Assembly: GCA_964019335.1 (NCBI GenBank) | Contig: OZ025665.1 | Span: 558,001-622,000 of the forward strand | Length of the DNA: 64,000 bases | From: Diplonema japonicum | Lineage: Eukaryota; Protista; Euglenozoa: Diplonemea | Direction of reading: 5' to 3' | Shown: positions 9,753 through 56,254 of the stretch, in pieces | Layout of the letters: every line of letters begins with the position of its first letter | Numbering within the stretch: the stretch's first letter is position 1 | The notes under the pieces: generated by a model | The model's database searches: none | Seen by the model: only the letters and a program-made list of their open reading frames with translations | Told to the model about the DNA's origin: nothing | Program-made: the position numbers and the translations under genes

Positions 9753-12700
9753 TCAAACCGGCTTCTCAGATTCTGTTTTTTTGTTTTTGTTTTTGTTTTT
9801 GTTCCCCCGACTTTTCAAGCAAATTGAATGAAAGTTGACGCTAGTCCCTATTAAAAAAAGAAATTAATCAGTGTCCTCGGAAATGAATAGGCTGCAGCAT
9901 CGCTGACCGTCTTACTTGTCGCTATTAAACACGGACCAAGATGTGAAATCATCATATTATTCTTCTTGTGGTGAGAGAAAGAAAAAGGGGGAGGAATCTC
10001 AGAATTCTTTTTGGTTTTAATTGAGAAGTATAGTCCGCCATCAGTCCTTCTTGGAAAGGGCCGTCGCAGTGCGAATATTCACCGTTTATGTGGAAAACAA
10101 GGGCGTAGTGGAAGGGGGTTCAAAACTGGATCAGTATATTGTTGTTGTTTAGGTTGATAAGTAGAATTGTAGTTTACCACTCGTCTTTCCCAAGAGGAAA
10201 AGGCGTCGTAAGTAGCGAATATTCTTACTGATCATCATTTGGCTAAAATGGCACAAACAAAAAAAAAAAAGATGGTTTCAGTGTCCTCGGAAATGAATAG
10301 GCTGCAGCATCGCTGACCGTCTTACTTGTCGCTATTAAACACGGACCAAGATATGAAATCATCATTTTTTATCGCTTTCTTCCCGAAATCCCAACCAAGT
10401 TTGAAGGGATAAAAAAAAATCTCGATGTTCAGTGTCCTGTTTGCTCAAGGCAATCGAAGCATTGTGGCCCTCTTAAAAGCCGCTCTTAACACCAGTCAGA
10501 AAGGATATTGTCATCACAACACATTCCATTTCCCCCCCCTTGTGGGTTGCCTTGTTGGAGGATCAGTATATTGTTGTTGTTTAGGTTGATAAGTAGAATT
10601 GTAGTTTACCACTCGTCTTTCCCAAGAGGAAAAGGCGTCGTAAGTAGCGAATATTCTTACTGATCATCATTTGGCTATGATAGCTGGGGTGGGATGGCGC
10701 AAACGATGGTTTCAGTGTCCTCGGAAATGAATAGGCTGCAGCATCGCTGACCGTCTTACTTGTCGCTATTAAACACGGACCAAGATGTGAAATCATCATT
10801 TTCTTTTATCGTTTTCTCCCCAAAATTCCCAGTTTGAAGAGATAAAAAAAAATCTCGATGTTCAGTGTGGCGGGGGCGCTGAGACACGACAGTAACTAAG
10901 GAAAACAGGAAAAGAAACTGGAGGCAGCAAAAAACAAATAGTTTCAGTGTCCTCGGAAATGAATAGGCTGCAGCATCGCTGACCGTCTTACTTGTCGCTA
11001 TTAAACACGGACCAAGATATGAAATCATCATTTTTTTCTTCTCTTTTCTTTTCCCGGGGGGGGCGAAGAAGAACACGGATCAGTACTTAGTTGTTGTTTA
11101 GGTTGATAAGTAGAATTGTAGTTTACCACTCGTCTTTCCCAAGAGGAAAAGGCGTCGTAAGTAGCGAATATTCTTACTGATCATCATTTGGCTAAAATGG
11201 CACAAACGAAAAAAAAAAAAAGATGGTTTCAGTGTCCTCGGAAATGAATAGGCTGCAGCATCGCTGACCGTCTTACTTGTCGCTATTAAACACGGACCAA
11301 GATGTGAAATCATCATGAGAGAAGACTTGAAGAGTAAGGGGGGGGATCAGAATTCTTTGGTTGAGAAGTATAGTCCGCCATCAGTCCTTCTTGGAAAGGG
11401 CCGTCGCAGTGCGAATATTCATTTTACTGGTCATCATGGATATTTTGGTAAACAAGAAAAAAATATAAGAGACAAAGGAGGGTCAAATTAAAATAAACCC
11501 GATGCCACACGAACTCCACGTGAGAGCTGCAAGGGGATCAGTGTCCTCGGAAATGAATAGGCTGCAGCATCGCTGACCGTCTTACTTGTCGCTATTAAAC
11601 ACGGACCAAGATGTGAAATCATCATTTTCTTTTAGAAAAAAAGAGAGAAGACTGCCGGGAAAAAAAAAATTCAGAATTCTTTGGTTGAGAAGTATAGTCC
11701 GCCATCAGTCCTTCTTGGAAAGGGCCGTCGCAGTGCGAATATTCATTTTACTGGTCATCATGGATATTTTGGTCAACAAGTAAAAAAAAAAGAGTAATGC
11801 GCTGCAAGGGGGGATCAGTGTCCTCGGAAATGAATAGGCTGCAGCATCGCTGACCGTCTTACTTGTCGCTATTAAACACGGACCAAGATATGAAATCATC
11901 ATTTCCCCCTCTTTTTGTTGCATCACACGAAAAAAGAACACGGATCAGTATATTGTTGTTGTTTAGGTTGATAAGTAGAATTGTAGTTTACCACTCGTCT
12001 TTCCCAAGAGGAAAAGGCGTCGTAAGTAGCGAATATTCTTACTGATCATCATTTGGCTATGATAGCTGGGGTAAAAATGGCACAGACAAAAAACAAAAAC
12101 GAAAAGATGGTTTCAGTGTCCTCGGAAATGAATAGGCTGCAGCATCGCTGACCGTCTTACTTGTCGCTATTAAACACGGACCAAGATGTGAAATCATCAT
12201 ACCTTTTTTATCGGATTCGGGTTCACTTTTTTTTGCGTCTTTCACACGTTTTGCTTCGAATGCTTGATTGGCCGACGTGAACAAGTCTTTAACGTCCTCC
12301 TTCTCGGCCACCCTGCGGGTCGGCAGGACAGCCATAAAGGCTGCGTCCCAAGACTTACTGATCTGGAACTGTGTCAAGATCTCCACCACGTGGTTTGTTG
12401 TCAATGTCTTGCATATTTCTATCTTCTCCACATTTGCCTTTGTCAGGAAGTCATCTAAGGGGAGCTTTGCATGTCCGATTCCCAGAGCGGTGGCTTTCTT
12501 CAAGGTGATGCCCTTGCACCGGTTGCGATCAACGATACCGCCAATAACGTAGTTGACACCGGGTTTAATGGTTTCCAAAGTGTTGGGAGAATCTCCTGTC
12601 AGGTAAATTGTGTTGGTTTCGTCAAGGGGCAAATATTTATCGATTCTCTCCGCAGTTTCAGTGAGCTTCCAGTTTGAAAAATTCTGTCTTTCGTTCAGGC

Positions 12701-13211
12701 AGGACCTGACACGACCCTTCTCGGACAACCCTGCCAGGGTGAGCCAGCAAGGTAGGCCTGCTTTGCGGAGATAAGCATGTGATAAAGAAACCTGTTGTGC
12801 TAGTGATTTCATAGCCTTCTCATCCATTTCTTTTTCGAAATCCATGTCGATGACCAGCTGAGGGCGTGCGGTTTTGTTATCGCAAGCTTCTTGAATAGCC
12901 TTTTCCAGGTCTTCTTTTTCCTTTAGTTTTCGTGTCCATGATTCTCCCGCTGCTTTTCTGACAGCGTCCTGTTCCTCTTCCGTCATCTTTTTCCAGACTT
13001 CTTCTTTTTCTTCTTTTATCTTTCGTCTTTTGTTTCTTTGGCGTTCCTTGTGCACGGCCTTTCGTTTTTCCCAGTGTTCCTTAATGCCTTCCACGCCACC
13101 GTATCTTGCCAGCCGCTTCTGCTGTTTCTTCGAGAGAACAGGTGGAGCATCTTTCTCCTCTGTTGTTGAGGCAGGCAATGCAGCCTCTTCTGCAGGTTTT
13201 TTTTCTTCAGA

Positions 13212-13214
<3 letters not shown>
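9753..13214 (-). CDS. TRM10: tRNA m1G9 methyltransferase TRM10 (exons 13214-12203 and 9772-9753); host gene of snoRNA array 1
   Basis: Motifs IDMDFEKEM, YLTGDSPNTL, YVIGGIVDRN, LPL and LTTNHVVEIL. The ORF-track tail MMISHLG... is snoRNA sequence. Donor G|GTATGA at 12202 and acceptor AAAACAG| at 9773 give the in-frame ending ...SDKKESEKPV*. The last exon is an inference. Confidence 0.88.
10429..10517 (-). ncRNA. snoRNA unit D (89 nt), box C/D RNA with unrecognised target; 5 copies (10429, 25073, 25672, 26260, 54818)
   Basis: GTGATGA...CCTTTCTGACTGGTG...TTGAGCAAACAGGACA-CTGA. Sequence conservation between copies is highest from box C to box D. Confidence 0.8.
11347..11437 (-). ncRNA. snoRNA unit C (91 nt), paralog of unit B with an altered guide; 3 intact copies (11347, 11671, 54190) plus 1 truncated
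   Basis: ATGATGA-CCAGTAAAA-TGAATATTCGCACT-GCGA...hairpin...CTGATGG(C')...CTGA; colinear with unit B. Confidence 0.8.
11945..12052 (-). ncRNA. U24: snoRNA unit B (108 nt), U24-like box C/D guide; 13 copies in the window
   Basis: ATGATGA...GAATATTCGCTACT-T-ACGA(D')...hairpin...CTGA. The guide is antisense to LSU AGTAGC(G/A)AATATTC, and the spacing to D' matches the yeast U24 5' guide as recalled (Am1449-equivalent site). Confidence 0.85.
12113..12200 (-). ncRNA. U18: snoRNA unit A (88 nt), U18-like box C/D guide; 18 copies in the window
   Basis: ATGATGA...CTTGGTCCGTGTTT...CTGA. The guide is antisense to the conserved LSU rRNA AAACACGGACCAAG, the segment targeted by U18/snR18. The D' box is degenerate. 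Confidence 0.85.
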
Positions 13215-13242
<28 letters not shown>

Positions 13243-13977
13243 CCTTTTTTTTTTTCCCCCTTTTGTTTTGGTGGTAATATGTTATGTGAACAAATGTTTA
13301 TAAAGAAAAAAAAAAACAATTCACGATGATTTTTTTTTTTGGGAAAGGGAGAGCGAGAACATGTTAATAACAAAAAAAAAATAAAAAAAATGGAATTTTA
13401 TTTCTTTCCGATAAAAAAAAACAGTTTTGGTGGATACTCTTTTTTTTTTTTTTTTTCTATTCTTCCCTCCTAGTATTTGAAGTGCCCAGGGGCTCTTTCT
13501 AACCAGACGGAGACAAGAGGGGAAATGGGGGGGGGGGGGGGGGGGATGAACGACGGAGATGAGGCGAAAAGAATAAAGAAAGAACAGAAAGAAAAAAAAA
13601 AACTGGAAATAAAATAAAGTATAAGTTGAGCGACATATTTCCTCTCCCCTTCACCCGCCACCCCATTTTTTTTTCTTCTTTTTTTTCGTTGATCACCCCC
13701 CCCCAAAAAAAAGGAAAAAAGAAGAAAACACGGGGACACACACCTAAAATCAAAAAAAAAAGAACAATAAAAGAACGCCTCGCGCTTTACATTTTGTGTT
13801 TTTTTTGTTTTTTTTTTATCAATTGCTGGACACACGGGAAAAAAAAAAAAAAAAAAGAAGGAAAAAAAAAAAAGAAAAAAAAAAAAAAAAAAAGATAGAT
13901 ACGATTGGAGAGAAGCGTTCACAAATGACCTCACAAAAAATAAAGGAAAAAAAAAAAAAAATAAAAAATAAAAAAAA

Positions 13978-16793
13978 TTAGATTACCGAAATCAAGTGCT
14001 CCACTGGAGTTTCGTAACAGTCCTCGCCCGGTTGGTTGTCAGGGGAAAGATCAAGAGTAGCAGTTGTGGACGTGAGGTCAACCAACATAGCGGTCTCTGT
14101 AGTGGTGGTCCAGGAGGAAGGGGTAAGCTCGGCTTCACAGGAGAAGGCGACAGTGGTACCAGTACGGAACGTGGTGTCGATCTTTTTGAGGTTCTTTGTA
14201 GGAATTTTGAAGAGAGCACTGTCCGCCTCGTCCCACTTTATGGTGGCGCTGCCTTCCTCAAGCGCATCGATTGTACCTATGTCAACAGACGGTATCCATG
14301 AACCATCCTCAAGCTCCTTTTCGTAATTAACGATGACCCTTGCACCGATCTTGAAGTCCTCTCCAACGATCTCAGATACGAACTTTACATGTTCTAAACC
14401 ACAGGTGTACACCTCCCCACCATCTGTCCATCGAACTGTTACCTTGTTGTCTGCCTCATGAACGTCGACTATCTCGGCCTCCGACTGCTGCCCCTCCCAG
14501 GCCCCTTCGTCGTTCTGTTGGTCATATGACACAGAGACGATATGCCCTTCTGCTGGTTCGTATGTGAAGTCTCTGGACTCTGCACTGACGCTGTCGTCGT
14601 CGGAGGCGGAGGAGGAGCCCACAGGGCGGACGAAGTCAAGGGAGCACCTGTACAAGCTGCCGTCGTCCTCCCAATCGACCACCGCTTCGTTGGCTTCAAT
14701 TGCGTGAAGCTTTGCGATTTCTTCCTTCAGCTCCCAGTCGCCTGTCTCTGTTTCGACTTCGATCTTCACGTGTACCTGTTTGCCGACCTGTAGCTTCGAG
14801 TGGTCTTCGTTCTCGGCTGCCACCTGCTTCTCGACAGTGTTGACGGGTGCGAGGTACGATGGTGACCCGTCGCCCCACTCGACCTCCACCATGCCTTCCG
14901 TCATTTTTATTACCGTCCCCACGCTGTGCGCCATGTTCCATTCCCCGTTCGGTTCTTCCTTCTCGTAGCTCACCTTCACCGTCTCGCCCGCCACGAAGGG
15001 TGGCCGTTCCTGATCGATGATCTTCCTGACGTGTCCTTTTTCTATTTTGAACAGCGGCGACCCGTCGTTCCAGTCCACCACCACAAGGTGTCCCTCCTCG
15101 TGCACGACTTTCCCCTCGGCGTAGCACTCCTTCCATACCCCGTCCGCTTGTTCCGCTTCGTACGTCACCTCGACCTTGTCCCCCGGGGAGAAGGTTGTTT
15201 TCTCCGTTGCTGCTGGAAGGTCGTCCGCGACCTCCACCCTGTCCTCCATCCCAGCCAGACGCCGCACCACCCACTCCACAGCGTTGGCGGCGATCTGCAG
15301 TATGTTCCCCACGTTGACACGGTTGTAGAGCTCGTTGTTAGTGTGGTACAGTCTGTTGATGAAGAAGAAGTAGGTGAAGATGCACCACAATGCAGGGGCG
15401 AGGGGCGGCGTCGGGACGAAGAGAAGGATGAGGAAGAAGAGGATGGCGCGCTTCAAGACGGACTCGGCAGTGTGCTGGCGCTGCCAAGAGATCACCTGGT
15501 GATAGACGACAGCCTTGTCGGCAGCCAGCCCGACGTACGGCGCCATGTTGTTAGTGGACGTCTTCAGCTCCTCGGCGGTGGGCTTCGTGTACTCGAAGTC
15601 AACGCCGTCCTCAGGCTCAGACAGGTCGGAGGTCGTCTGGTGCGACATGTACGAGAGGCGTGACTGCGCGGTCGACCGAATGGACTCAGGGCGTGTTCTT
15701 GTAACCACACCTGCGACAGTGTTCCCAAGGGTACCGACCGCTCCTGCTACGTTCCCTACAGCACCTGCGGCAACACCTGCAACATTGCCCACGGCGCCTG
15801 TCAGGACGCCTGCCACGTTACCAACAGCACCGACGGCCTTCCCGATGAAGCGCTTCTCGAAGACTTTGGTGTCTACGCCAAAGAAGACCTGGAAGCACGC
15901 CGGGGACTGCAGGAAGAGGAACGGGTTCTGTTTTTCGTCGTGGTCCTCCCGTTTGTACGAAGCACCCCGCCGGAACAGCACCAGAAGGACGGCAGGGAGC
16001 GCCGCCCGCGACAACCTTTCAGCGATAAAATACGGAACGTAGCCAAGAATGGCAACCATGGTCACAGCAGCGAAGATAGCCATGCGGTGGTCGTCAATGA
16101 GGACGACTTGCTTCTCAGTGGTGCCCCCCTCCCCTTCCTCATATACTATCTTGTATCCGGAAATGTGGTCGCGAAGCCACAGCAATGGTGCGGTGAAGTT
16201 CCTTGCGTGGATTGCTAGGCGAGCGAGATCGCGTTCAATGATGTCTAGGTCTGCGGTGCCGGATTTCTTCTTGGCGGGTTTTCCGACGGTTTTGTTTTCT
16301 AGCTGGTCGAGCAGATGGTCGGACGCGAGGTACTTCGACAGTGCGAAGTACGTGTGAGAATAATCGATCTTCACTTCCCCCATCCCGCCGTACTTCTCAA
16401 GCAGAGCCTTGTCATCGGCGTTATCAGGACGTGGTTTCAAGGGGAGCCAGATGCTGTCGGAGTTTGGGAGACCTGCGCCGAAGGTGAGCTCGGCCATTCC
16501 CATGAAATCGTTTGACCCTACCTTGTCGTGGTCATAGACAGTGATCGTCACCTTGTTCACCTTGTTCTTGTGAAGGAACACAAAGGACTCTGCGTCCCAC
16601 TTTGGGTTCAACGTTCGCGCGCACACTTTTGTTTGCTTTTCTTCGTTTTGAAACTTCACCTTCACGAATGGGTCACTGTACCCAGCTTTTTTTTTTAAAT
16701 TTTAATTTTTTTTTTTTTTTTCCGATACATACTTGTGTCCATTGGGATCATCTGTCTCCCTTCGATCACCCTGATGCGAAGCGACCCTGACAT
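13978..16793 (-). CDS. C2-domain multi-transmembrane protein with C-terminal tandem Tudor/SH3-like barrel repeats (one intron near 16731-16677)
   Basis: Exon 1 MSGSLRIRVIEGRQMIPMDT joins DPFVKVKF...TLNPKWD...VYDHDKVGSNDFMG (Ca-binding C2). Hydrophobic segments follow, then about 6-7 repeats of G..V.V.YE.E..DG.W...V.V.W.DGS..Y. Confidence 0.8.
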
Positions 16794-16810
16794 TTTTCTT
16801 TTCTTTCTTT

Positions 16811-16850
<40 letters not shown>

Positions 16851-16966
16851 TGCCTCTCTCTCCCTCCCCTCCTTTTTTTTTTTTTTTTGTATTTGTTTTG
16901 AAGGGACGACATCAAACAAGAAGAAACACACTACAAACAGGTAAAAAAAATATATTGACACTCATA

Positions 16967-17917
16967 TCAGTATGGAATAGGCCCCCAAGGCGCGTGTTTG
17001 AACCCTGCCACCTGTTTTATCGAGTTGTTAAACACATCGAGATACAGGTACCTGTCCTCGGAGAATTGTTTGCACCAGTGTTTCAAAAGTGGGTCGGTGA
17101 GGAGTAGCTGTTCCGCAGGTGTGGTTCTGATAGACTCATCCTCAGGGTGGTGGGAATAGGTGGGGGTGTGGACCCAATTGGTCTCGAGAAGACTTTTATA
17201 GTACGAGTTGGATAGAAGTGGTCTACTTTTCTGAGCGGGACAGAGGGAAGGGGCTACACTATGTGCACTCATCAGAGCAACTATATTCTGGTCATGAAGA
17301 CCCTTTTTGTAGAAGAACCGTCGAAATTCGTCAGTGCTGGACACCTCCATGCCTTCTACAAGATCAGCGACATCTGGCTGTATGTCGGTCCCTTCAGGCC
17401 TCCCGTACTTAAATGGTACTTCGGGGCCCCCTAACACCTGAACGGCAACACAGCTCGAGAGGACCCATAGGTCGGGTGTGGAAATGTTAGGGTGGGCCTT
17501 GTGGAGTTCATCTAATTTTTCCAGTAAACCGTCGAATTTTTTGGTATGCTCATGTGTTGGAAGGTGTCCTGAGAGGCCGTGTGCGGTCTCCTGTGGTCTT
17601 CGATACCGGAAGGAGGAGTTGCCCACCCAGAGTAGTTTTAAGGCGAGGGGTGCCATTTCGGGGTTGCGGCTGAATATCTCGTCGAGATCCTCGTGGAGCT
17701 GCAGGGCGTCAAAGGGGGCCAGTGCCTCGTCACCTTCGTTGAGCTCGCCCTTGACAATCCACACTGCAGCCGCCATCATCCCTCCACCTATAACTACTGT
17801 TGTCGTAAACATGTCCCATTCCGCGTGCTGTGAAGGCAGCTTTTGCTTGAACCTTCTTTGAACTCCTATTTTCCCCACTCTGGTCGCTGCGGCCCGCCGC
17901 GCTAAACTAGACAACAT
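16967..17917 (-). CDS. Class I heme peroxidase-like (APX/CCP family) mitochondrial protein, probably catalytically divergent
   Basis: Arg-rich presequence MLSSLARRAAATR, a TM helix, ISTPDLWVL, LGGPEVPFKYGR, IVALMSAHSV, LSNSYYKSLL and LLTDP. Confidence 0.8.
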   Translation of the reverse strand: MLSSLARRAAATRVGKIGVQRRFKQKLPSQHAEWDMFTTTVVIGGGMMAAAVWIVKGELNEGDEALAPFDALQLHEDLDEIFSRNPEMAPLALKLLWVGNSSFRYRRPQETAHGLSGHLPTHEHTKKFDGLLEKLDELHKAHPNISTPDLWVLSSCVAVQVLGGPEVPFKYGRPEGTDIQPDVADLVEGMEVSSTDEFRRFFYKKGLHDQNIVALMSAHSVAPSLCPAQKSRPLLSNSYYKSLLETNWVHTPTYSHHPEDESIRTTPAEQLLLTDPLLKHWCKQFSEDRYLYLDVFNNSIKQVAGFKHAPWGPIPY

Positions 17918-18108
17918 GTGTCCCCCCTTTTTTTTTTCCACTTTGAGAATGTAGAGTTGCAAAACGGAGGGGGGGGGGACGAAGAGGAACGAAAAAAAAA
18001 TAATAAACACTCAGGAGACACTTTACAAAACTGATTTGTCTGTTTTTTTTTTTTTTTTTTTTTTCTTCTCCCCCTTTAAAAAAAAAAAAAAAAAGAAAGG
18101 AAAAACCT

Positions 18109-18465: not shown

Positions 18466-18496
<31 letters not shown>

Positions 18497-18849: not shown

Positions 18850-18912
18850 TTTTTTTTTTTCCTTTCCCCCCCTCGCTTCCTATTTTTTTTTTTTTTTTTC
18901 TTGGACGGCGGG

Positions 18913-18946
<34 letters not shown>

Positions 18947-18970
18947 AGAAGAAGATGCTGAACAGCCCCT

Positions 18971-20920: not shown

Positions 20921-23900
20921 TCATTTACCCTTCTTGGTTGACCTCGAGGCTGGTGTTTTCGTAGCGGGTGTTTTTGTTGTGGGTGTCTTGCTGCTTTTCT
21001 TGCTTTTTTCCCCAGCGTCGGATAGAATCTTACGCTTACCCGTTTTCGGCGAAGAAGTAGCAGTCGATGTAGCCGGCTTCACCCTCTTAGAAGAAGACCC
21101 GGGCGATCTTCCACCAGCAGGGGAAAGGTTCCGCTTCCGAGGCTGCTTCGGTGATGTTGGCTCGGCTTCAATAGTCGCTTCTCTTGGGTTAATATGCCTG
21201 TCGTTTTTCCTAGTAACGGGGACAAATTTTCTTTCGTCAATGTATATTATCCCGGAACAATTCTTACGTGACTCGTCAGCTTCGGTGAAGAGGTTGGGAA
21301 TATTGATCATCCCAGGGAAGGGCTCCACCTTCACCTGCTTGCTCACAGTAACTTGCTTCAAAACCACATAAGCTATGTCACAAATCAGCCTGGTATCGGT
21401 CGAAGCAGGATGAACGGCATCGTCCATTCCCTTCAGCCTCCCAATGATATCAAATAAAAACGATGTACAACCCCTAACCTCAGTCAGCTTGTCAAACAGT
21501 ACAAATAGGACCCTTTGGATGGGAAGGTACGACGGTCGTAATTTTTCCAAGTACTCCCATCTTGCTAATAGATGGATCAGGGGAGGTACGGTGTACTCCG
21601 GGCTGAGACCGGCAGCGGCCTTGCTTGCCAGTTTTACGTCGTATTGTTTACATTTCGTGCGGAAGTATGTGATGCACTCCTCGACTCTTTCCTTCGCCTT
21701 CAAGTAGCAATTCTTGTTCCCGTCGACGAGAGTCATAATCAACAGCTGCATGAACTGCATTGGGAGCTTGCCTCTCATGATGTCTCTGTGGAGTACTCTC
21801 CCTACCTCAGACCGTGCTTCAGCGTGTGCCAGTTTAACTTCAGCTTCCGCTGAGAATTCCGCCGTTAAGAATAGCAACGTGAACGCGATTGTCTATTTTT
21901 TTTTTTTTTTTTTTTAGAGAAAAAAAAAAAAACTTTTTTTCCTTATACCTGCCAAACGTGCGGGGTCACCCCTGTGTTCGACACGAACAGGATTTTCGAA
22001 AGCTTCTTTTCCCTGCCAAGCTTCAGGATCGCCTTCAACGTGTCAGCCGTTTGAATTGCCTTCGCGATGTTGTTCTCCACAGCGGACATATGCTGTTTTT
22101 TTTTTTTTTTTCCCTTCCCGCTTCATACCCGGAGATAGGTTACCAATTGTTTGTAGGTCCCCTTTATCATTTCTGTTACGCTTGGAGAGTCGGGGAGGGA
22201 GGCCACATATGCTATGAAGACCCTCAGCGCTGCCTTGTAGGCTTGGCAGTCCAGCGGAGGTTTGCGGAAAGAGTGGTGTTTCGACAGCTTGATGTCCTTT
22301 TGGTGCAAGGTGTTCATCACTGTTGTGACGTATTTAGCAGCATGGTTGGTGGTTTTCGAAGACAGCGGTACGAGGAGAAGGCATTGCTGCAGGACACGGA
22401 AGAGCGAGAGGGTTTTATGAGTGCTTGTTTTTTTGGGGTCGAGCGCCTTGAGACACTCATCGGCGAGGCCGTTGAGGAGCGCAGCCTTGTCGCCTTGTGC
22501 CGTGAGGTGGAGGACTTGAACTGATATTTTTGCGATCTTTTCGGTTGTGTTTAAACTGAGCTTTTTCAAGACCTTGCTCAGCTTTGTCTGCTCGGATTTC
22601 CCGAGGTTCTCGAGCACCTTATTATCTGCAATTACCAATGACTTCAATGTGGTCAGCATGTTCCAGAGAAGAGACCGCCGTTGCCCTAAGGTGGTGACCT
22701 TTTGTCGCTTTCCTGTTGATGTGCTGACGGGTATGGATTCATCTTCACCACCCCATCCTTCGTCATCAGCCTCGTTGGAGGCTATTTGTGTGAGGAGTGC
22801 GAAGATTTCAGAGGAAATTGTTTCCTCGCTGCAAATTTCAGGGAAGCTGCTCACCAAGACGGACAATAGGTAGGCCAGGTCGTTGCTCTTCTCCCCATCG
22901 ACCCCGGCCACATCGTTCAGAAGCTGCACCACACCCTTCAGCACCAAGTTGTCGATAGGGAAGGCAACCCTGACAAGCAGCACCTCCATGTTCTTAGCCA
23001 ACGCCTTCAGATCGTTGTTCCCCTTGACGCTTGCCTCGATCGCCTTTAAAGTCTTCTTCTTCTGTTTCATTGCGTCTTCCGGGTCCTGACACAGTGCGAT
23101 CAGGTTTTTGAACACCGCCTCGTCCTTAAGCAGTAAGAGGTTTTCCAACCCGGAGGAGATTGCACAGCATTGCTGAAGCTGTTGGATAATCTGGTGGATG
23201 GCAGCTCTTGACTGTTCTTTCATGAGAGGCTCGCTGTTCTTTTTCAAATACGGGCGTAGAGTCATCATCCGGAGGACGAGGTCTCGGATACTTTTTTTTG
23301 AGCGGAGCAGTTTTGCGAAGGTTTCCTTCGCTGTTGGGGTGAGACTCCTCCAAACCTCGACGAGGACAGCAGCAGAGCGTGAGACGCTGTCGTCGGCAAG
23401 CCCTTCACCGTCGTTTTCATCAACATCATACAGGATTGTGTGGGTGATGTTTTTCTCAATCTCACGACGTTCCTCTGGTTCCGTGGAGCGGTACACATCG
23501 AGAAGTGCAGAGGGTATCATGTTGAACGGGTGGGGCAGCTTTTTTTCAGCCTCCACGTATTCGGAAAACATCTGCGAGAGCACTGTCATGGCGAATCTTC
23601 TAATAGGTGCCTTCTTGTCCCTGATGCGTTCCAAGGCCTTTTCCATCACAACTTTAGGAAGCAACGAATGGTCGGTTTGAACGATGGCGATGACCGATTT
23701 CAACGCGGCTTTCTTGACATCGTTTTCGCTGTCTTCGAGTCTCTGGATCAACGCGCTGCCGACTGTGTCTCTTGTGTCGCGGTGCCTTGGTAGGAATCGT
23801 ACCACCCACTCGGTCATTACAAGACGGATGTCTTTGTTTTTGTCGATGAACCTTCGCATGGTCGAGGTGAACATAGTGGGGTATTCTGAGTAGTAAGTTG

Positions 23901-26900
23901 TGTGCATTTCGAAGGCTTTGCACATTGCATTTGTCGCCATCATGCGGAGGGCGTTGTTTGTGTGCCCGAGGCGGTGGGCAATGGTTGGGAACAACGTTGT
24001 CGCAACGTGCTGGTTCCCCGTATCTGCTAGCGCGAGGATCACCATGAAAAACGATCGGATTTTCTTCGATATTTCATGTTGGCTCGCCTTGTCTGCTACC
24101 GCTAAGGACGCGTCCAGCTTGTCCACGTTTTTAACAATGTATGAGCAGAATGCTTGCAGTACTGGTGTGTCCAGTCTTCTCACAACCGATTTGACCATTT
24201 TTACCCCTGCGGACGATTTCGTTTTCTTCCCCGAGAGGGGTGCGATGATGAGTTCTAATAGTTCTTCGGTCACCTCCTGTGCTTGGTCCAGGATACCTTT
24301 TAGTAGATCTGCGAGCTGAGCGGCCAGAGCCACATCAGCGTTCTCTTCGGCCCTGAAGGAGAGTTTGTTAATGCACATGTCGAAGAGGTCGGACATCATC
24401 TGGTCGCCGTCTTGTTTCAAGGTCGCCATCAAGGCGAGTAGACCGCTCTTCACGATCGACTCCACCACGTGGTACATCAGCTGGTAGGTTTCGGAGTCCT
24501 TGTCGGCCTTCTCCAAGTGGTAGAACTGGCGCAGCAAAAACTGCATCACCGGCTTCTCGTCGGGAAATATAAAATTCGGCTTCGTCGCCTCGCAAACGTC
24601 TGCTATTACCGCCGCTGTCAGAATCTGTTTTTTTTTTTTTTTTTTTTTTCTTTTTGTCGTAAAAAAAAAAAAAAATAATAATAATAATAAGAGAATCAGT
24701 GTTGCTTGGAAAATGATGCAGGAGATGCAGGAGATGCAGGGCGAATGAATGAGACACGGATCAGCGTTTTAGTTGTTGTTTTTGGCTGATAAGTAGAATT
24801 GTAGTTTACCACTCGTCTTTCCCAAGAGGAAAAGGCGTCGTAAGTAGCGAATATTCTTACTGATCATCATTTGGCTATGATAGCTGGGGTGGGATGGCGC
24901 AAACAAAAAAGATAAACGATGTTCAGTGTCCTCGGAAATGAATAGGCTGCAGCATCGCTGACCGTCTTACTTGTCGCTATTAAACACGGACCAAGATGTG
25001 AAATCATCATTTTCTTTTAACGCTTTTTTCTCAAAATTCCCAGTTTGAAGAGATAAAAAAAAATCTCGATGTTCAGTGTCCTGTTTGCTCAAGGCAATCG
25101 AAGCATTGTGGCCCTCTTAAAAGCCGCTCTTAACACCAGTCAGAAAGGATATTGTCATCACAACATATTTTCATTTACTCTTCCTTTTCTTTTTGCCTGG
25201 TGCCCTTGTGGGTCGCATCAGTATATTGTTGTTGTTGTGGTTGATAAGTAGAATTGTAGTTTACCACTCGTCTTTCCCAAGAGGAAAAGGCGTCGTAAGT
25301 AGCGAATATTCTTACTGATCATCATTTGGCTATGATAGCTGGGGTGGGATGGCGCAAACAAAAAAAAAAAAAAAATTCTTTATGACTATATGTCCTTGTT
25401 GTTCGCACGAGCAAAAAAGATTTTTAAAAAGCTGCGAAAGTTTTTTGCTCGGCACAAGTTGCATATAGTTATAAAATCATTTTTTGAAAGATAAATATTT
25501 GTAACAAAAAAAAAAGATGGTTTCAGTGTCCTCGGAAATGAATAGGCTGCAGCATCGCTGACCGTCTTACTTGTCGCTATTAAACACGGACCAAGATGTG
25601 AAATCATCATTTTCTTTTAACGCTTTTTTCCCAAAATTCCCAGTTTGAAGAGATAAAAAAAAATCTCATGTTCAGTGTCCTGTTTGCTCAAGGCAATCGA
25701 AGCATTGTGGCCCTCTTAAAAGCCGCTCTTAACACCAGTCAGAAAGGATATTGTCATCACAACACATTCCATTTCCCCCCCCTTGTGGGTTGCCTTGTTG
25801 GAGGATCAGTATATTGTTGTTGTTTAGGTTGATAAGTAGAATTGTAGTTTACCACTCGTCTTTCCCAAGAGGAAAAGGCGTCGTAAGTAGCGAATATTCT
25901 TACTGATCATCATTTGGCTATGATAGCTGGGGTGGGATGGCGCAAACAAAAAAAAAAAAAAAATTCTTTATGACTATATGTCCTTGTTGTTCGCACGAGC
26001 AAAAAAGATTTTTAAAAAGCTGCGAAAGTTTTTTGCTCGGCACAAGTTGCATATAGTTATAAAATCATTTTTTGAAAGATAAATATTTGTAACAAAAAAA
26101 AAAGATGGTTTCAGTGTCCTCGGAAATGAATAGGCTGCAGCATCGCTGACCGTCTTACTTGTCGCTATTAAACACGGACCAAGATGTGAAATCATCATTT
26201 TCTTTTAACGCTTTTTTCCCAAAATTCCCAGTTTGAAGAGATAAAAAAAAATCTCATGTTCAGTGTCCTGTTTGCTCAAGGCAATCGAAGCATTGTGGCC
26301 CTCTTAAAAGCCGCTCTTAACACCAGTCAGAAAGGATATTGTCATCACAACACATTCCATTTCCCCCCCCTTGTGGGTTGCCTTGTTGGAGGATCAGTAT
26401 ATTGTTGTTGTTTAGGTTGATAAGTAGAATTGTAGTTTACCACTCGTCTTTCCCAAGAGGAAAAGGCGTCGTAAGTAGCGAATATTCTTACTGATCATCA
26501 TTTGGCTATGATAGCTGGGGTGGGATGGCGCAAACGATGGTTTCAGTGTCCTCGGAAATGAATAGGCTGCAGCATCGCTGACCGTCTTACTTGTCGCTAT
26601 TAAACACGGACCAAGATGTGAAATCATCATTCCCTCCCTCCTCCCTTTACAACAAAAAAAGTTGTTTCGATTTTAGTGGTGCCATGCAGTATGTGACACA
26701 GCGGCCACCCTTGTGAAACTTCGCCCCGAAGCCTCCCAAGTCCCCTGTGGTCCCGTAGAAAGTAAAAGTGGAGAGGTAAAGAAAGCTTGGAAATTGAAAT
26801 AGGGAGAGGGGCCACAGAAGCAATTAAACACCAACTGGAGAGTTGTGGGAGGCTTGCTTCACTGGCACGATGCCGCGGGGAGGCTACTTGCCTGACCTGG

Positions 26901-27387
26901 TGAAGCCACCTCCTTGTTCGATGTAATGGGATAAGGGACTCTCCGTTGAGGGCGATGCTAACTGGCGCCACGCGTAGGGTGGGCTCTCCACCCCCGTCCA
27001 GGTTTCCCCACGTGTACGGCTTTAGAACGAGAGTTTCCCTTTCGCTTGTGTTTCTCCAAACCACAATTACCAGGAACCACCACAGGGAGGTTGGAAACAT
27101 TGGTCCCCTAACATTAGTCCCCAAAAAAAGAGGCCACAAACCTGTACAGCCTGTGGAGCCGCCTTTCCAATGTAACTTTCGCGGGAAATCTCTTTTGTGA
27201 ACCCGTTGGGCTTGAGAATGGATGCAACAGCACCATCTGCAAATTCGCCGCCTCTCTCTCCAAAGAAATTGTGTATGTCCCTCAAACGTTCTTTGATTTC
27301 ACTATTTGAGAGGCTTTTCAGCACCTTGCCTGTTGTGAGGGTCTCGAGCTCTTTCTCGGCCTTCTCGTTCTTCCCCGCTTTCGGCAT
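20921..27387 (-). CDS. PDS5: Sister chromatid cohesion protein PDS5 (exons 27387-27142, 24624-22129, 22092-21949, 21892-20921); host gene of snoRNA array 2
   Basis: HEAT repeats with RFIDKNKDIR, RLEDSENDVK, ERIRDKKAPIR and PEYTVPPLIHLLA, plus a basic S/T/P tail. Phase-0 join CAG|GTTTGT (27141) to AAAACAG| (24625) gives KAAPQAVQ-ILTAAVIADV, matching the Pds5 DVRLLVACCLAD motif. Confidence 0.9.
24761..26630 (-). ncRNA. Intronic polycistronic box C/D snoRNA array 2 (4 A, 4 B, 3 D) in PDS5 intron 1 (27141-24625)
   Basis: Left ends: B 24761, 25218, 25806, 26394; A 24923, 25523, 26111, 26543; D 25073, 25672, 26260. Includes a 588-bp tandem duplication. Confidence 0.92.
25379..25475. repeat. ~97-nt imperfect inverted repeat (hairpin), second copy at 25967-26063
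   Basis: Arms TTTATGACTATATG/CATATAGTTATAAA, CTTGT/ACAAG and CGAGCAAAAAA/TTTTTTGCTCG. Confidence 0.8.
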
Positions 27388-46192: not shown

Positions 46193-46232
<40 letters not shown>

Positions 46233-48477: not shown

Positions 48478-48561
48478 TTTTCTTTTTTTTTTTTTCTTTT
48501 GGGTCCTCTCCTCTCCCCTGTTTCTATTTTTTAAGGGGGGACAAAAAAAGTTTTTTTTTTC

Positions 48562-48592
<31 letters not shown>

Positions 48593-48637
48593 AAAAATCT
48601 GTTTTTTTTTTTTTTCCTTCTTTTTTTTCCATTCGAG

Positions 48638-48669
<32 letters not shown>

Positions 48670-48711
48670 ACTGCGAACGAACACTTTTTTTTTTTTTTGT
48701 TGGTTGCTCCC

Positions 48712-51234: not shown

Positions 51235-51380
51235 GTTTCTTTTTTTTTTTTTTCTCCTTTTTTTTTTCCCTTCTAAGGAAATCGAAAAGAGAAAGCGTGC
51301 TAACAAAAGAAGAAGAAAAAAAAAAAAGTAAAAGCGAGGAATTGTTTGGAAAACCACTTCTCTCATCTTTTTTTTTTTTT

Positions 51381-54300
51381 TTATTCGCACGTGTGGGTGT
51401 GTTTCACCCTTTGGATGATCAGCTTCAACTCCTTGAAGAGTGCCTCGTCTCGATTGCTCTCCTTCAAGATTTTTATCTGTTTGTTGCACAGATGCACTGC
51501 GTTGCTCAGGTCCTTCCCCGCAGGCGACGCCTCAGCAAGAAACTCGACAAGATCTGGAGGTGGGCTGGGGGTGGCGAGCACCAAGTGGAGAGGTGACCGA
51601 AGATGGGTGAAGCAAGGCAGAGAGCCTTGTTGAAGGAGGAGCTTTGTACAGGATACATGTAAATTGACGATAGAGTAATGAAGCGGTGGGTACCCCAGCG
51701 CATCAAGAAGATTCGGGTCCGCAGAGCGAGCCAAGAGAAGCGAAACTATCGGGTAGGGATCGGTGCCCCGGTGCAGTAACGCACAGTGCAGGGCTCTGTA
51801 ACCTTTCCCTTTACGCTTTTTATCGTGGTTTTCCTTTAACTTGAGCACTTCTTCGCTGAGCCCCTCCAATCGGTGATCGTGGGACCATTCTGCAAAACCC
51901 CCTGGGGACGTGCATATATCCATGAACTTTGCCCCGCACAACTTCCACATGGTTTCAAGTATAAAGGTGTTCTTGTATCGTTCGCCCCCTGCCTCGCTGA
52001 CGATTTTTTTCACCTCGATTCTGCTGAGCTGGGAAAACATGACCTCCGGGTCCTCTGTTGGCGAATCGACCGTTATGACCTCGCGCTGCTTTGAAAGCGC
52101 GGAACTGAAACTCTGCCTCCCGGCTTCACAGCGTGCCCTGTATGCCGGTTTCAAAACCGGTTTTCGCAGCAGGTTCTGCAACACAGCATGCCGCCCCAAC
52201 AACGCTGCCCGCTGGAAGGGGTGCATCCCGTCGCCGAGGCCTTCTTCAAGCCACGGCACCGATTTGTAAGGAAGCCCGTAAGGACAGGACAGCATTGCCT
52301 TGTTGGAATCAAGACATTCTGTCAGAGTAGCTGCGATGTTGGTGCTGTGTGAGAAGGACACGTAGCAATCATTCACCGTGAAGGACCCTGTAATGGGCTC
52401 CAGATCGGGGTCGAGCCAGGTGACTCCCAACGAGTTTTTACCTTGAAAATAGGTAACGAAGAGACCCGGTACTGGGTCGGGGTGGGTGCATAGATGGTCC
52501 CAAGCGGTTGCTTGGTTCAACGACGGGTGGAAGCACCCCGTTCTGGAGAAGCTTGAAAAGTTCCACAGGAGCTCAGTCTCGGGCCCGAACAGATTTTGAA
52601 ACCGTTCCCAGTCTTCCTCTTCGCAGTACCCTCCTCGGAGTGGTTCTAGAAAGTCCAGAAGAGGCTTTGCAATGTGGCTCAAGGGCCTTCCGTTTCTGGC
52701 GGCAAGCTTGCGTATGACAGCAGTTGTTTTGGTTCTGTTGTGTTTCTCGCCTTCATGGCGTTCCCTGACTACGAGCAAGCACCGTCTCCATGCGATTTCG
52801 TCTAATAAAAGCATGTCCCATGCTTGGTGGCGGAGGTCTCGTTTCTTGATCAGGTGGATGTGGTTCACCATTTTTTCCAACCCCGCGATAAACGACTGCG
52901 TGCTGTGCCCTGGTTCACAGATGACCTCGTGTTGCTGGGTGAACTCGTCCAGCGTTGTGCCTATAGATTTCAAGTCGTTCCGAAGCGACAGTGGTAGGTT
53001 CGACAGTTCGCCTATTAAGTACAGCACACGCTGTGTTGTCCACGATGTCAGAGGGAGATCAAGAGGTGGGTGCATTATACCGTCGTTCTTGGTGTTCATG
53101 AGAACCCAGACTTGGTGGAGGCCGTTGCTCGCTGGGTCCATACCCATGTCGGTAATCAGCCGTTTTACTGTCTTCTCGTCGCCCCTCAAGCCTTCCGTTA
53201 CAATGAACTCGTATAGTACTTTAGCCAAGGCTTGTACTAATGGTCTTCCTGTTGCGCCTGCGGTGAGGTTCTTCCAGGTTATTTTCGGTTTTGCTTTCTT
53301 AACGTGCCGTGGTCTCAGCACCCAGGTGATCTTTTCATTCTCCTCCCACTCGTCTTGTTCTTGTTCCACTTGCACGATGCTCTTTTGCTTCATGGAGGAG
53401 GTTAGTTTCCTAGAAGATGACCTGAGCTTTGCATCGAACATCGAACAGGGCAACAACGGGATCTGTGTATTGTTGTGATCCACAGTTTTAATAGAATACA
53501 AAATTGAATGTTTTTTTTTGGGGGGGTGGGATCAGTGTTGCTCGGAAATGAATAGGCTGCAGCATCGCTGACCGTCTTACTTGTTGCTATTAAACACGGA
53601 CCAAGATGTGAAATCATCATTTTTGTTCTCCTTCTTTTTTTTGGGGGGAAAAGAAAGAATACTAAAATGCAGATGGGGTTTGTTGGAGGATCAGTATATT
53701 GTTGTTGTTTAGGTTGATAAGTAGAATTGTAGTTTACCACTCGTCTTTCCCAAGAGGAAAAGGCGTCGTAAGTAGCGAATATTCTTACTGATCATCATTT
53801 GGCTATGAGGGGACGGACGGTATCTCGTCGAGAAACTTTACACGAGGTTATGCTAAGCGTACTCGTTGTGCGAATGTACTCCCCCCTGAACCCATAATCT
53901 TTGATTTCTCGTTTCAGGGGTTAGTGCCGTGAGAGCCATTTGAAGAACATCTCTCGATCCTGAGACGGCATCGTTTACAGTAGTGGACTACGACGGTATC
54001 TGATCCCCACACTCTCGTTCTTGATTAATGAAGACATTCTTGTCGAATGCTTTCGCAGAAGTTCGTCTTCCCACGATCTAAGAATTTCACCTCTGACGTG
54101 GGAGTACGTACGACCCCGGCAGTCCCTATTGATCCCGCTGGGTGAAGGTTGAGGGCGATTTGGCTCGAAGAGAAGAGTAAGGGGGGGGATCAGAATTCTT
54201 TGGTTGAGAAGTATAGTCCGCCATCAGTCCTTCTTGGAAAGGGCCGTCGCAGTGCGAATATTCATTTTACTGATCATCATGGATATTTTGATCAACAAGA

Positions 54301-56254
54301 AAAAAACATAAGAGACAAAGGAGGGCCAAATTAAAATAAACCCGATGTCCACGTGAGAGCTGCAAGGGGGATCAGTGTCCTCGGAAATGAATAGGCTGCA
54401 GCATCGCTGACCGTCTTACTTGTCGCTATTAAACACGGACCAAGATATGAAATCATCATTTTTTCTCTTTACTTTTTCCGGGGAGGGGCGAAAAAGAACA
54501 CGGATCAGTATATTGTTGTTGTTTAGGTTGATAAGTAGAATTGTAGTTTACCACTCGTCTTTCCCAAGAGGAAAAGGCGTCGTAAGTAGCGAATATTCTT
54601 ACTGATCATCATTTGGCTATGATAGCTGGGGTGGGATGGCGCAAACAAAACAAAAAAGAAGATGGTTTCAGTGTCCTCGGAAATGAATAGGCTGCAGCAT
54701 CGCTGACCGTCTTACTTGTCGCTATTAAACACGGACCAAGATGTGAAATCATCATTTTCTTTTATCGTTTTCTCCCCAAAATTCCCAGTTTGAAGAGATA
54801 CAAAAAAATCTCGATGTTCAGTGTCCTGTTTGCTCAAGGCAATCGAAGCATTGTGGCCCTCTTAAAAGCCGCTCTTAACACCAGTCAGAAAGGATATTGT
54901 CATCATAACATATTTTCATTTACTCCCTTTATTTTTATTTTTTTTGCCTGGTGCCCTTGTGGGTTGCCTTGTTGGGGATCAGTATATTGTTGTTGTTTTT
55001 GGTTGATAAGTAGAATTGTAGTTTACCACTCGTCTTTCCCAAGAGGAAAAGGCGTCGTAAGTAGCGAATATTCTTACTGATCATCATTACAGCAAAATAA
55101 AAGAATTGCTAAATTTCGGTGTGCGGGTGGGTGCTCATTGCTCAGGGAGAAATTCACATTTCTGCGGTCGCTGTCCGGCGTCTGCGGTGGCTATGTGTCG
55201 TGATAGGATGGACGGCATCTGGGCGAGAAACACAGCTTGGAAAAAAGGGTAAAAAAGAAATAGAAACTATCATGGGGAAGGACAAGAAGCTTTAAACACA
55301 AAGAGAAACAAGATTCAGTGTCCTCGGAAATGAATAGGCTGCAGCATCGCTGACCGTCTTACTTGTCGCTATTAAACACGGACCAAGATGTGAAATCATC
55401 ATTTTTTTGTTCTCTCTTTTTGTTCCCCTCCTGGTGGACAAAGAAGAAAGATCATCATTTGGCTATGATTGGCGGGGGGCGCTGAGACACAACAGTAACG
55501 AAGGAAAACAGAAAGAAACTGGAGGCAGCAAAAAAAAAACAAATAGTTTCAGTGTCCTCGGAAATGAATAGGCTGCAGCATCGCTGACCGTCTTACTTGT
55601 CGCTATTAAACACGGACCAAGATGTGAAATCATCATTTTTTTTCTTCTCTTTTCTTTTCCCGGGGGGGGGGGGGGGGGGGGCGAAGAAGAACACGGATCA
55701 GTACTTAGTTGTTGTTTAGGTTGATAAGTAGAATTGTAGTTTACCACTCGTCTTTCCCAAGAGGAAAAGGCGTCGTAAGTAGCGAATATTCTTACTGATC
55801 ATCATTTGGCTATGATAGCTGGGGTGGGATGGCGCAAACAAAAAAAAAAAAAAAAAAAAAATGGTTTCAGTGTCCTAGGAAATGAATAGGCTGCAGCATC
55901 GCTGACCGTCTTACTTGTCGCTATTAAACACGGACCAAGATATGAAATCATCATTGTTCTTTTTTTGTTCTGATTGCAACACACGGGAAAAACGGATCAG
56001 TACTTAGTTGTTGTTTAGGTTGATAAGTAGAATTGTAGTTTACCACTCGTCTTTCCCAAGAGGAAAAGGCGTCGTAAGTAGCGAATATTCTTACTGATCA
56101 TCATTTGTACGGCAAGAAAACAAAGTTTTATGTATCCTTCTTCTTCCCCCCTCCCCTTCTTTAACCACACCGGAGAAAGCTCCCAATTGCAATAGATATT
56201 GCCAGAAGGATAGGGTTCAGCAAGAAGCCTCTCAGCGATGCTCGGACTTGCCAT
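51381..56254 (-). CDS. Ankyrin-repeat protein with SH2-like segment (exons 56254-56171 and 53462-51381); host gene of snoRNA array 3
   Basis: Ankyrin motifs GYRALHCALLH, ADPNLLDALGYPPLHYSI and SPLHLVL. Phase-0 join CCG|GTGTGG (56170) to ACACAG| (53463) gives MASPSIAERLL...WELSP-IPLLPCSMF. Exon 1 is an inference. Confidence 0.75.
53532..56104 (-). ncRNA. Intronic polycistronic box C/D snoRNA array 3 (6 A, 5 B, 1 C, 1 D) with an embedded SSU rRNA fragment
   Basis: Left ends: A 53532, 54372, 54668, 55315, 55549, 55867; B 53691, 54505, 54979, 55698, 55997; C 54190; D 54818. Confidence 0.92.
53869..54134 (-). pseudogene. 18S (SSU) rRNA fragment, post-V4 to V5 region, non-functional
   Basis: Minus strand AATAGGGAC...AGAGGTGAAATTCTTAGA...GCGAAAGCATT...TTCATTAATCAAGAACG...AGATACCGTCGTAGTC...TAAACGATGCC...GGGGGAGTAC. 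Lacks the conserved ~10-nt (R)AAGATGATC between two GATC at about 54001-54005. Confidence 0.92.

What the first reader, a model, noticed from the sequence alone, without database searches (positions are those of the whole stretch)
9773..56170. The same shuffled snoRNA array occupies giant introns of three unrelated genes, suggesting a spreading snoRNA-cassette system
Seen: most introns here are 36-65 nt, but TRM10 (12202-9773), PDS5 (27141-24625) and the ankyrin gene (56170-53463) each have a 2.4-2.7 kb intron. Each holds 11-15 intact copies of near-identical box C/D units from the same set of four (18 A, 13 B, 3 C, 5 D in total), always sense to the host and in different orders. Spacers are also shared between loci up to 45 kb apart (e.g. 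10870-10943 vs 55472-55548, and TTGGCTATGATAGCTGGGGTGGGATGGCGCAAAC). Known: trypanosomatid and Euglena snoRNAs form tandem polycistronic clusters, and yeast/vertebrate U18 and U24 are single intronic units in translation-related hosts. Inference: a modular snoRNA cassette is amplified and moved or homogenised between arbitrary host introns, by retroposition or ectopic gene conversion, at a copy number far above what a few methylation sites should need. The similar intron sizes hint at a length constraint.
Basis: partly seen in the sequence, partly recalled or inferred. Interest (0 to 1): 0.92.

Follow-up and report, generated by a model that had tools for sequence, protein, structure and literature searches.

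The report
Repeated snoRNA arrays inside giant introns
In the marine protist Diplonema japonicum, all copies of four ribosome-modifying guide RNA genes sit as repeated arrays inside three very long introns of unrelated neighbouring genes. This is a new variant of known snoRNA gene layouts and not a cassette spreading through the genome.

Summary
Forty box C/D units lie in three minus-strand arrays: 18 A, 13 B, 3 C plus one truncated C, and 5 D. All are sense to the host genes and share spacers and multi-unit blocks.

Two of the three giant introns are confirmed. A D. japonicum transcript-derived protein ends exactly at the predicted TRM10 junction. A relative's PDS5 aligns without a gap across the PDS5 junction. 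The ankyrin intron has only indirect support.

A carries a U18-type guide, and B and C a U24-type guide, to conserved LSU rRNA sites. Units are 98-100% identical, while spacers are 63-86% identical.

The idea of a spreading cassette is not supported:
- Every copy in the 62.5 Mb genome lies in this 46 kb stretch.
- No solitary or poly(A)-tailed copies exist.
- Blocks are copied with their spacers, which points to local DNA duplication and unequal crossing-over. One 588-nt repeat is still perfect.

The similar intron sizes are coincidental. The introns also hold three families of dispersed repeats and a 281-nt piece of the cell's own 18S rRNA.

Closest known layouts are the intronic snoRNA clusters of rice and Drosophila and the reiterated clusters of Euglena and trypanosomatids. 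I found no paper on diplonemid snoRNA genes.

Other first-stage notes of this scan (unchecked) report similar arrays on other pieces of the same genome.

The parts
9773..12202 (-). Giant intron of TRM10 (2430 nt, GT..AG). The donor GT abuts box C of the first A unit.
   Evidence: Transcript-derived protein P0036 ends ...DKK|ESEKPV, exactly exon ending 12203 plus exon starting 9772. Signals match the small introns.
9868..12200 (-). Array 1: 16 units, A B A C A C A B A A B D A B C' A
24625..27141 (-). Giant intron of PDS5 (2517 nt, GT..AG)
   Evidence: Relative's PDS5 P0035 residues 7-84 align to exon 1, and residue 85 onward to the first residue of exon 2. Pfam PDS5 profile 50-824 falls on exon 2.
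24769..26630 (-). Array 2: A B D A E B D A E B D A B, where E is an inserted repeat and not a snoRNA
25239..26535 (-). Perfect tandem duplication: a 709-nt stretch (26535-25827) is identical to the stretch 588 nt downstream, module B-D-A-E
53463..56170 (-). Proposed giant intron of the ankyrin-repeat gene (2708 nt); not verified
   Evidence: The typical gene-start architecture (pyrimidine tract, purine-rich leader, ATG at 56254) lies upstream of the array and the frame is kept. No transcript or homology evidence.
53532..56107 (-). Array 3: B A B A A B D A B A C [18S piece] B A
11228..11316 (-). Reference unit A (U18-type C/D snoRNA, 89 nt). 18 copies with upper ends at 12200, 11902, 11625, 11316, 11031, 10799, 10365, 9955, 26630, 26198, 25610, 25010, 55954, 55636, 55402, 54755, 54459, 53620.
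   Evidence: Box C ATGATGA and box D CTGA. A 14-15 nt guide pairs LSU 715-729. Rfam SNORD18 scores 25 bits, below the cut-off. 12 copies are identical.
11076..11190 (-). Reference unit B (U24-type, 115 nt). 13 copies with upper ends at 12055, 11190, 10673, 10241, 26504, 25916, 25328, 24873, 56107, 55808, 55088, 54615, 53801.
   Evidence: A 14-nt guide pairs LSU 1515-1528. The first ~88 nt are invariant in all copies.
11345..11437 (-). Reference unit C (paralogue of B, 93 nt). Copies at 11761-11671, 11437-11345 and 54280-54188; truncated copy at 10081-9999.
   Evidence: An 11-nt guide pairs LSU 1519-1529.
10428..10516 (-). Reference unit D (89 nt). 5 identical copies with upper ends at 10516, 26347, 25759, 25160, 54905.
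   Evidence: An 11-13 nt guide pairs LSU 2703-2715. 100% identity between copies.
53869..54149 (-). Piece of the cell's own 18S rRNA inside array 3, where an A unit would be expected
   Evidence: 281/281 identical to the rDNA (SSU about 1048-1338) with one 10-nt deletion.
26651..27111 (-). Dispersed ~455-nt repeat inserted 30 nt after the PDS5 donor site
   Evidence: At least 317 candidate copies genome-wide, 40 scored at 98-100%, flanked by T runs.
25370..25505 (-). 'E': 136-nt palindromic dispersed repeat inserted in a T run of an A>B spacer. Second copy at 25958-26093.
   Evidence: At least 503 candidate copies genome-wide, on both strands, 97-100%. The fold is a long hairpin.
55094..55241 (-). 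~150-nt member of a third dispersed repeat family inside array 3
   Evidence: At least 274 candidates at about 80% identity.
27142..27387 (-). PDS5 exon 1 (82 codons)
9752..9772 (-). TRM10 last coding exon: the end of a split codon, then S E K P V and the stop
56171..56254 (-). Proposed ankyrin exon 1 (28 codons)
   Evidence: unverified

Best explanation
These are the only genes in the Diplonema japonicum genome for a U18-type guide (A), two U24-type guides (B, C) and a fourth guide (D). All four are box C/D snoRNAs that guide LSU rRNA 2'-O-methylation. They are arranged as three reiterated head-to-tail arrays, each inside one very long spliceosomal intron of a protein-coding gene (TRM10, PDS5, and probably an ankyrin-repeat gene). 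The three hosts lie within 46 kb of one same-strand gene cluster.

Inferred working: RNA polymerase II transcribes the arrays as part of the host pre-mRNAs. The units are cut apart in the spacers and trimmed back to the ends protected by snoRNP proteins, either from the excised intron or in competition with splicing.

The arrays arose and keep changing at the DNA level. Multi-unit blocks, spacers included, were duplicated locally into two further sites and then shuffled by unequal crossing-over between the abundant A and B units. Selection, perhaps helped by short-tract gene conversion, keeps the units nearly identical while the spacers drift. The long introns also collect unrelated insertions: three repeat families and an 18S rRNA piece.
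For: Units and counts.

Guides: 11-15 nt pair with conserved LSU sites directly after box C. Rfam SNORD18 is the best family for A, though below its cut-off.

All copies in the genome lie here:
- A 18/18, B 13/13, C 4/4, D 5/5.
- The box C plus U18-guide pattern gives 18 hits, all in the window, and 0 in the control.

Introns:
- TRM10 is confirmed by the D. japonicum transcript protein P0036.
- PDS5 is confirmed by seamless alignment of P0035 across the junction and by Pfam.
- The small PDS5 introns use the same GTATGA/GTATAA donors and an A run followed by YAG at the acceptor.

DNA-level block duplication:
- Collinear blocks of up to 580 nt are shared between arrays.
- Spacers are specific to the pair of flanking unit types.
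- The T13 variant of A mostly travels with its upstream B>A context in arrays 1 and 3.
- A 709-nt stretch is repeated perfectly at a period of 588 nt.

Constraint: units are 98-100% identical, equally within and between arrays, while spacers are 63-86%.

Copy number is real: X3 short-read depth is about 99 for single-copy sequence, 203 for 2-copy, 316 for about 3-copy and 778 for about 8-copy segments.
Against: - No RNA evidence for mature snoRNAs or for their processing. No run on record as RNA held the locus.
- The ankyrin junction is unverified, and its donor GTGTGG is less typical.
- The D' boxes are degenerate, and no rRNA target was found for the 3' guide regions.
- Rfam does not reach its cut-off for any unit.
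- Whether unit identity is kept by selection alone or by gene conversion cannot be separated with these data.
- A second TRM10 transcript isoform (P0001) ends earlier, through a 9-A run. Two DNA runs show 8 A there. The cause is unexplained.
Confidence: 0.75

Rival explanations
1. A mobile snoRNA cassette that spreads by retroposition, or as a transposable unit, into arbitrary introns across the genome.
For: The genome has active retroelements and many scattered rRNA pieces. A 100% identical 18S piece sits in array 3, so RNA-templated insertion does occur here.
Against: - There are no copies of A-D outside the 46 kb stretch.
- There are no solitary units, poly(A) tails or target-site duplications.
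- Blocks are copied with their non-transcript-like spacers.
- The truly mobile families in these introns have hundreds of copies. That shows what spreading looks like in this genome.
Confidence: 0.05
2. The arrays are intergenic, as in trypanosomatids. They would lie between a polyadenylation site and the next trans-splice site, not in cis-spliced introns.
For: All large ORFs are on one strand, as in a polycistronic cluster. Earlier notes of this scan report spliced-leader use in this genome. The ankyrin exon 1 is only 28 codons and unverified.
Against: The TRM10 junction is present in a transcript-derived protein. The PDS5 exon 1 / exon 2 junction is seamless against a homologue. For the ankyrin gene, the usual pyrimidine tract, purine leader and ATG lie upstream of the array, not downstream.
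Confidence: 0.2
3. Assembly artefact: one array collapsed, expanded or wrongly placed three times.
For: Near-identical repeats are hard to assemble. Short-read contigs break inside the arrays.
Against: - Each array has unique junctions to different unique genes and a distinct unit order.
- Each array carries private insertions: the 18S piece and different repeat families.
- Short-read contigs from two studies cross the TRM10 exon/array border with no differences (records 21 and 30).
- k-mer depth matches the copy numbers.
- The transcript junction spans array 1.
Confidence: 0.03
4. Decaying satellite-like pseudogene arrays with no present function.
For: Some units are broken: the truncated C at 10081-9999, a B stump at about 55470, a D stump at about 10875, and a decayed A at the end of array 2.
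Against: Intact units are 98-100% identical while adjoining spacers are 63-86%. The guides are invariant in all copies. These are the only U18-type guide genes in the genome.
Confidence: 0.04

Closest known systems
Intronic snoRNA gene clusters of rice and Drosophila (Liang et al. 2002; Huang et al. 2005, as cited in PMC2780460)
   Same: Several snoRNA genes lie head to tail in one spliceosomal intron of a host gene, sense to the host, and are presumably released from the intron.
   Different: Here each intron holds 11-16 units drawn from only four types, so the same snoRNA recurs up to 8 times in one intron. The same set occurs in three unrelated hosts close together. The organism is a trans-splicing euglenozoan.
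Reiterated polycistronic snoRNA clusters of trypanosomatids and Euglena (PMC2784804; PMC2780460)
   Same: Same supergroup. Short units with short spacers are repeated many times on the coding strand of directional gene clusters. High copy number is normal.
   Different: From my own knowledge, those clusters are described as lying between genes. Here at least two arrays lie inside cis-spliced introns of protein-coding genes.
U18 and U24 single intronic snoRNAs of yeast and vertebrates (U24: Qu et al. 1995, cited in PMC2780460)
   Same: Same conserved LSU target regions. Rfam SNORD18 is the best model for A. The U24-type assignment of B and C rests on my recollection of the U24 guide sequence. 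The location is intronic.
   Different: Those are one snoRNA per intron, in hosts related to translation. Here there are arrays in hosts unrelated to translation.

Membership tests
Box C/D snoRNA | Box C (RUGAUGA) near the 5' end and box D (CUGA) near the 3' end | tested here: met
   All intact A, B, C and D units start with (A)TGATGA and end with CTGA.
Box C/D snoRNA | A guide of 10 nt or more, complementary to rRNA and placed next to box D or D' | tested here: inconclusive
   Perfect duplexes of 11-15 nt to LSU rRNA lie 8-16 nt after box C. The D' box that should follow is degenerate (for example AATA after the A guide). No target was found for the guide region next to box D.
Box C/D snoRNA | A stable small RNA bound by fibrillarin/Nop56/Nop58 that directs 2'-O-methylation | not testable with these tools
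   No RNA run held the locus.
Rfam SNORD18 (U18) | Score at or above the family's gathering cut-off of 41 bits | tested here: not met
   24-25 bits, E 0.04-0.17. The resemblance rests on the guide and the target site.
Intronic snoRNA gene cluster | Two or more snoRNA genes inside one spliceosomal intron of a host gene, in sense orientation | tested here: met
   TRM10 by transcript-derived protein. PDS5 by homology across the junction. Ankyrin unverified.
Intronic snoRNA gene cluster | snoRNAs processed from the host pre-mRNA or the excised intron | not testable with these tools
   Needs RNA data.
Euglenozoan intergenic reiterated snoRNA cluster | Tandem reiteration of a few snoRNA genes on the coding strand | tested here: met
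Euglenozoan intergenic reiterated snoRNA cluster | Location between genes of a polycistronic unit | tested here: not met
   At least arrays 1 and 2 are inside cis-spliced introns.
Retroposed snoRNA copies / mobile cassette | Dispersed solitary copies with a poly(A) tail and target-site duplication | tested here: not met
   No copy outside the three arrays. Units are always embedded in shared spacers.

The most novel reading that the evidence does not exclude
The insertion of array pieces itself created, or hugely expanded, the host introns. In TRM10 the donor GT directly abuts box C of the first unit, and only a 20-nt coding remnant follows the array. This looks like an array dropped into the 3' end of the gene and then spliced out through fortuitous signals. 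If so, reiterated snoRNA arrays would be a source of intron gain in diplonemids, with host splicing and snoRNA release coupled or competing.
Probability: 0.2. Interest if true: 0.7.

Novelty: new variant of a known kind. Interest (0 to 1): 0.5.

Why it matters
Diplonemids are among the most abundant marine protists, and I found no paper in the searchable library on their snoRNA genes.

This locus shows a layout that combines two known ones: the reiterated arrays typical of Euglenozoa, and the intronic clusters of plants and insects.

It offers a clean natural system for two questions:
- How are many snoRNAs released from one intron without destroying the host mRNA?
- How do tandem RNA-gene arrays copy themselves to nearby sites and stay uniform?

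It also corrects the more exciting reading. The cassette is not spreading through the genome.

Tried and rejected
- **'E' as an H/ACA-like snoRNA.** It forms a single hairpin followed by AGA, with z -4.3. I rejected this because it is a dispersed repeat with at least 503 candidate copies on both strands.
- **The TRM10 array lying after the stop codon.** The transcript protein P0001 ends DAKKK, which suggested this. I rejected it after the second isoform P0036 gave the exact spliced end and two DNA runs confirmed 8 A.
- **RNA evidence.** The look-up of sequencing runs gave no run on record as RNA. The two 'RNA?' runs X1 and X2 turned out to be relatives at 95-99% identity, with changes at spacings that are multiples of three as third-codon changes would be, and they show no joints at the introns.
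- **The search for homologous proteins for PDS5 and the ankyrin gene.** Both gave nothing.
- **Regex and ORF scans for small introns.** These were too noisy to give a splice consensus.
- **The three intron tails.** They are not alignable beyond the A-rich run and CAG, so the introns themselves were not duplicated.
- **Rfam.** It finds no family for B, C, D or the 455-nt repeat.
Full report
**What is there**

BLAST of four reference units against the window finds 40 hits, all on the minus strand, in three blocks.
- Array 1, 12200-9868: 8 A, 4 B, 1 D, 2 intact C and one C that lacks its 5' 16 nt.
- Array 2, 26630-24769: 4 A, 4 B, 3 D.
- Array 3, 56107-53532: 6 A, 5 B, 1 C, 1 D.

The unit orders differ between arrays. 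Each spacer is specific to the pair of unit types it separates (A>B, B>D, D>A, B>A, A>C, C>A). Collinear multi-unit blocks of 250-580 nt are shared between arrays at 89-97% identity.

**What the units are**

Every intact unit starts with (A)TGATGA and ends with CTGA. Each carries, 8-16 nt after box C, a perfect 11-15 nt complement to the organism's own LSU rRNA (rDNA fetched):
- A pairs LSU 715-729.
- B pairs LSU 1515-1528.
- C pairs LSU 1519-1529.
- D pairs LSU 2703-2715.

Rfam's SNORD18 is the best model for A, but at 25 bits it stays under its 41-bit cut-off. B and C pair with the site that I recall as the U24 target, but Rfam gives no SNORD24 hit.

Units are 98-100% identical, and equally so within and between arrays. 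The spacers next to them are 63-86% identical. Twelve of the 18 A copies are identical, and the guides are invariant in all copies. This is the signature of constrained, functional genes.

**Organism and setting**

All large ORFs in the 64 kb window are on the minus strand. The TRM10 protein is 100% identical to EukProt EP01064 Diplonema japonicum transcripts. This agrees with an earlier follow-up note of this scan. The assembly is 62.5 Mb in 132 contigs.

**Are these introns?**

*TRM10: yes.* I first took the transcript isoform P0001, which ends DAKKK, as evidence that the stop codon lies before the array. The second isoform of the same Trinity gene, P0036 (343 aa), ends ...SEPESDKK|ESEKPV. 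That is exactly the exon ending at 12203 joined to the exon starting at 9772. P0001 needs nine A where the genome has eight. Two independent short-read DNA runs also have eight (records 21 and 30). The cause of that variant is open.

*PDS5: yes.* A phmmer scan of 1.8 billion representatives with exon 1 alone found a 1280-aa protein, P0035. Its residues 7-84 align to exon 1, ending at the last exon-1 residue. Its residue 85 aligns to the first residue of exon 2, and the alignment then runs on for 830 residues. Pfam's PDS5 profile starts at position 50 on exon 2.

Two small PDS5 introns (36 and 56 nt) show the local signals: GTATGA or GTATAA at the donor, and an A run followed by CAG or TAG at the acceptor. 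The TRM10 and PDS5 giant introns use the same signals.

*Ankyrin: plausible only.* The usual gene-start architecture of this genome is a pyrimidine tract, a purine-rich leader and then ATG. Here it lies upstream of the array at 56254, as it does for eight other genes. The frame is kept across the proposed junction. There is no transcript or homology evidence.

**Not a spreading system**

Whole-genome searches find every copy of A (18), B (13), C (4) and D (5) inside these three arrays and nowhere else. The pattern 'box C plus U18 guide' hits only these 18 places, against 0 in the control. The U24-type pattern hits the 16 B and C units plus three places elsewhere that I did not follow up.

So these arrays are the genome's only U18-type guide genes, and almost certainly its only U24-type genes. 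They are confined to 46 kb. No unit stands alone, none has a poly(A) tail, and units are always copied with their spacers. The T13 variant of A mostly keeps its B>A context in arrays 1 and 3.

This argues for local duplication of multi-unit DNA blocks followed by unequal crossing-over. It argues against retroposition. A 709-nt stretch repeated perfectly at a period of 588 nt in array 2 shows that the process is recent. Short-read depth in run X3 matches the assembled copy numbers: about 99 for unique sequence, 203 for two-copy, 316 for about three-copy and 778 for about eight-copy segments. That speaks against an assembly artefact.

**What else sits in the introns**
- Unit 'E' in array 2 folds as a long hairpin, and I first took it for an H/ACA-like RNA. 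It is a dispersed repeat with at least 503 candidate copies on both strands, inserted in a T run and then duplicated with its module.
- The 511-nt head of the PDS5 intron is mostly a ~455-nt repeat. It has at least 317 candidate copies at 98-100% identity and is flanked by T runs.
- Array 3 holds a ~150-nt member of a third family, with at least 274 candidates at about 80% identity.
- Array 3 also holds a 281-nt piece of the cell's own 18S rRNA. It is identical at all 281 aligned positions and has one 10-nt deletion. It sits where an A unit would be expected. Further SSU pieces lie on five other contigs.

Without these insertions, the snoRNA parts of the arrays measure about 2.3, 1.5 and 2.2 kb. 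The similar intron lengths therefore give no sign of a length constraint.

**Comparison with known systems**

Intronic snoRNA gene clusters are known from rice and Drosophila, and polycistronic clusters from plants and trypanosomatids (PMC2780460). Clustering of guide snoRNA genes is also noted for trypanosomatids and Euglena (PMC2784804). The present case joins the two layouts: reiterated arrays of a few types, but inside cis-spliced introns of unrelated protein genes. No paper in the searchable library treats snoRNA genes of diplonemids. I therefore class it as a new variant of a known kind.

**Limits**
- No run on record as RNA held the locus.
- The two 'RNA?' runs were relatives at 95-99% identity.
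- The primary papers on rice clusters and T. brucei snoRNAs are not held in the library.

Noticed in passing
window 53869-54149 (minus): A 281-nt piece of the cell's own 18S rRNA, identical at every aligned base with one 10-nt deletion between short direct repeats. It sits in array 3 in place of an A unit and is followed by 67 nt of unique sequence (53802-53868) found nowhere else in the genome. Other SSU pieces lie on contigs C37, C78, C80, C34 and C22.
   Followed up: partly
window 26651-27111 (minus); loci L005-L010: A ~455-nt dispersed repeat with at least 317 candidate copies at 98-100% identity, bounded by T runs of variable length on both sides. It has no Rfam match. It looks like a very young non-autonomous mobile element.
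   Followed up: partly
window 25370-25505 and 25958-26093 (minus); L009: A 136-nt palindromic dispersed repeat with at least 503 candidate copies on both strands. It is inserted in T runs. On contig C7 it lies directly after a copy of the 455-nt repeat.
   Followed up: partly
window 55094-55241 (minus): A member of a third dispersed repeat family (~150 nt, at least 274 candidates, about 80% identity) inside array 3.
   Followed up: no
window 12225-12232: An A8 run in the TRM10 coding sequence. One Trinity isoform (P0001) reads as A9 and ends the protein early, while two DNA runs show A8. The cause could be transcript slippage, strain difference or an assembly variant.
   Followed up: partly
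window 12201-12203: The TRM10 donor GT directly abuts box C of the first A unit (G|GT-ATGATGA), so the splice site and the 5' end of the snoRNA share bases. An earlier first-stage note also records this.
   Followed up: partly
window 21893-22128: The small introns of PDS5 end in runs of 17-21 A before the CAG or TAG acceptor. The two confirmed giant-intron acceptors are A-rich as well. An A-rich rather than pyrimidine-rich 3' intron end seems typical here.
   Followed up: partly
window 59975-60092: The 705-aa ORF and the 1214-aa WD-repeat ORF overlap in different frames. This may be one gene with an intron or a frameshift.
   Followed up: no
G000:C119 (L001-L004): The rDNA unit is only 6825 bp, with a 2070-nt SSU and a contiguous 3480-nt LSU by Rfam. 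At least five tandem units lie on a 33 kb contig.
   Followed up: no
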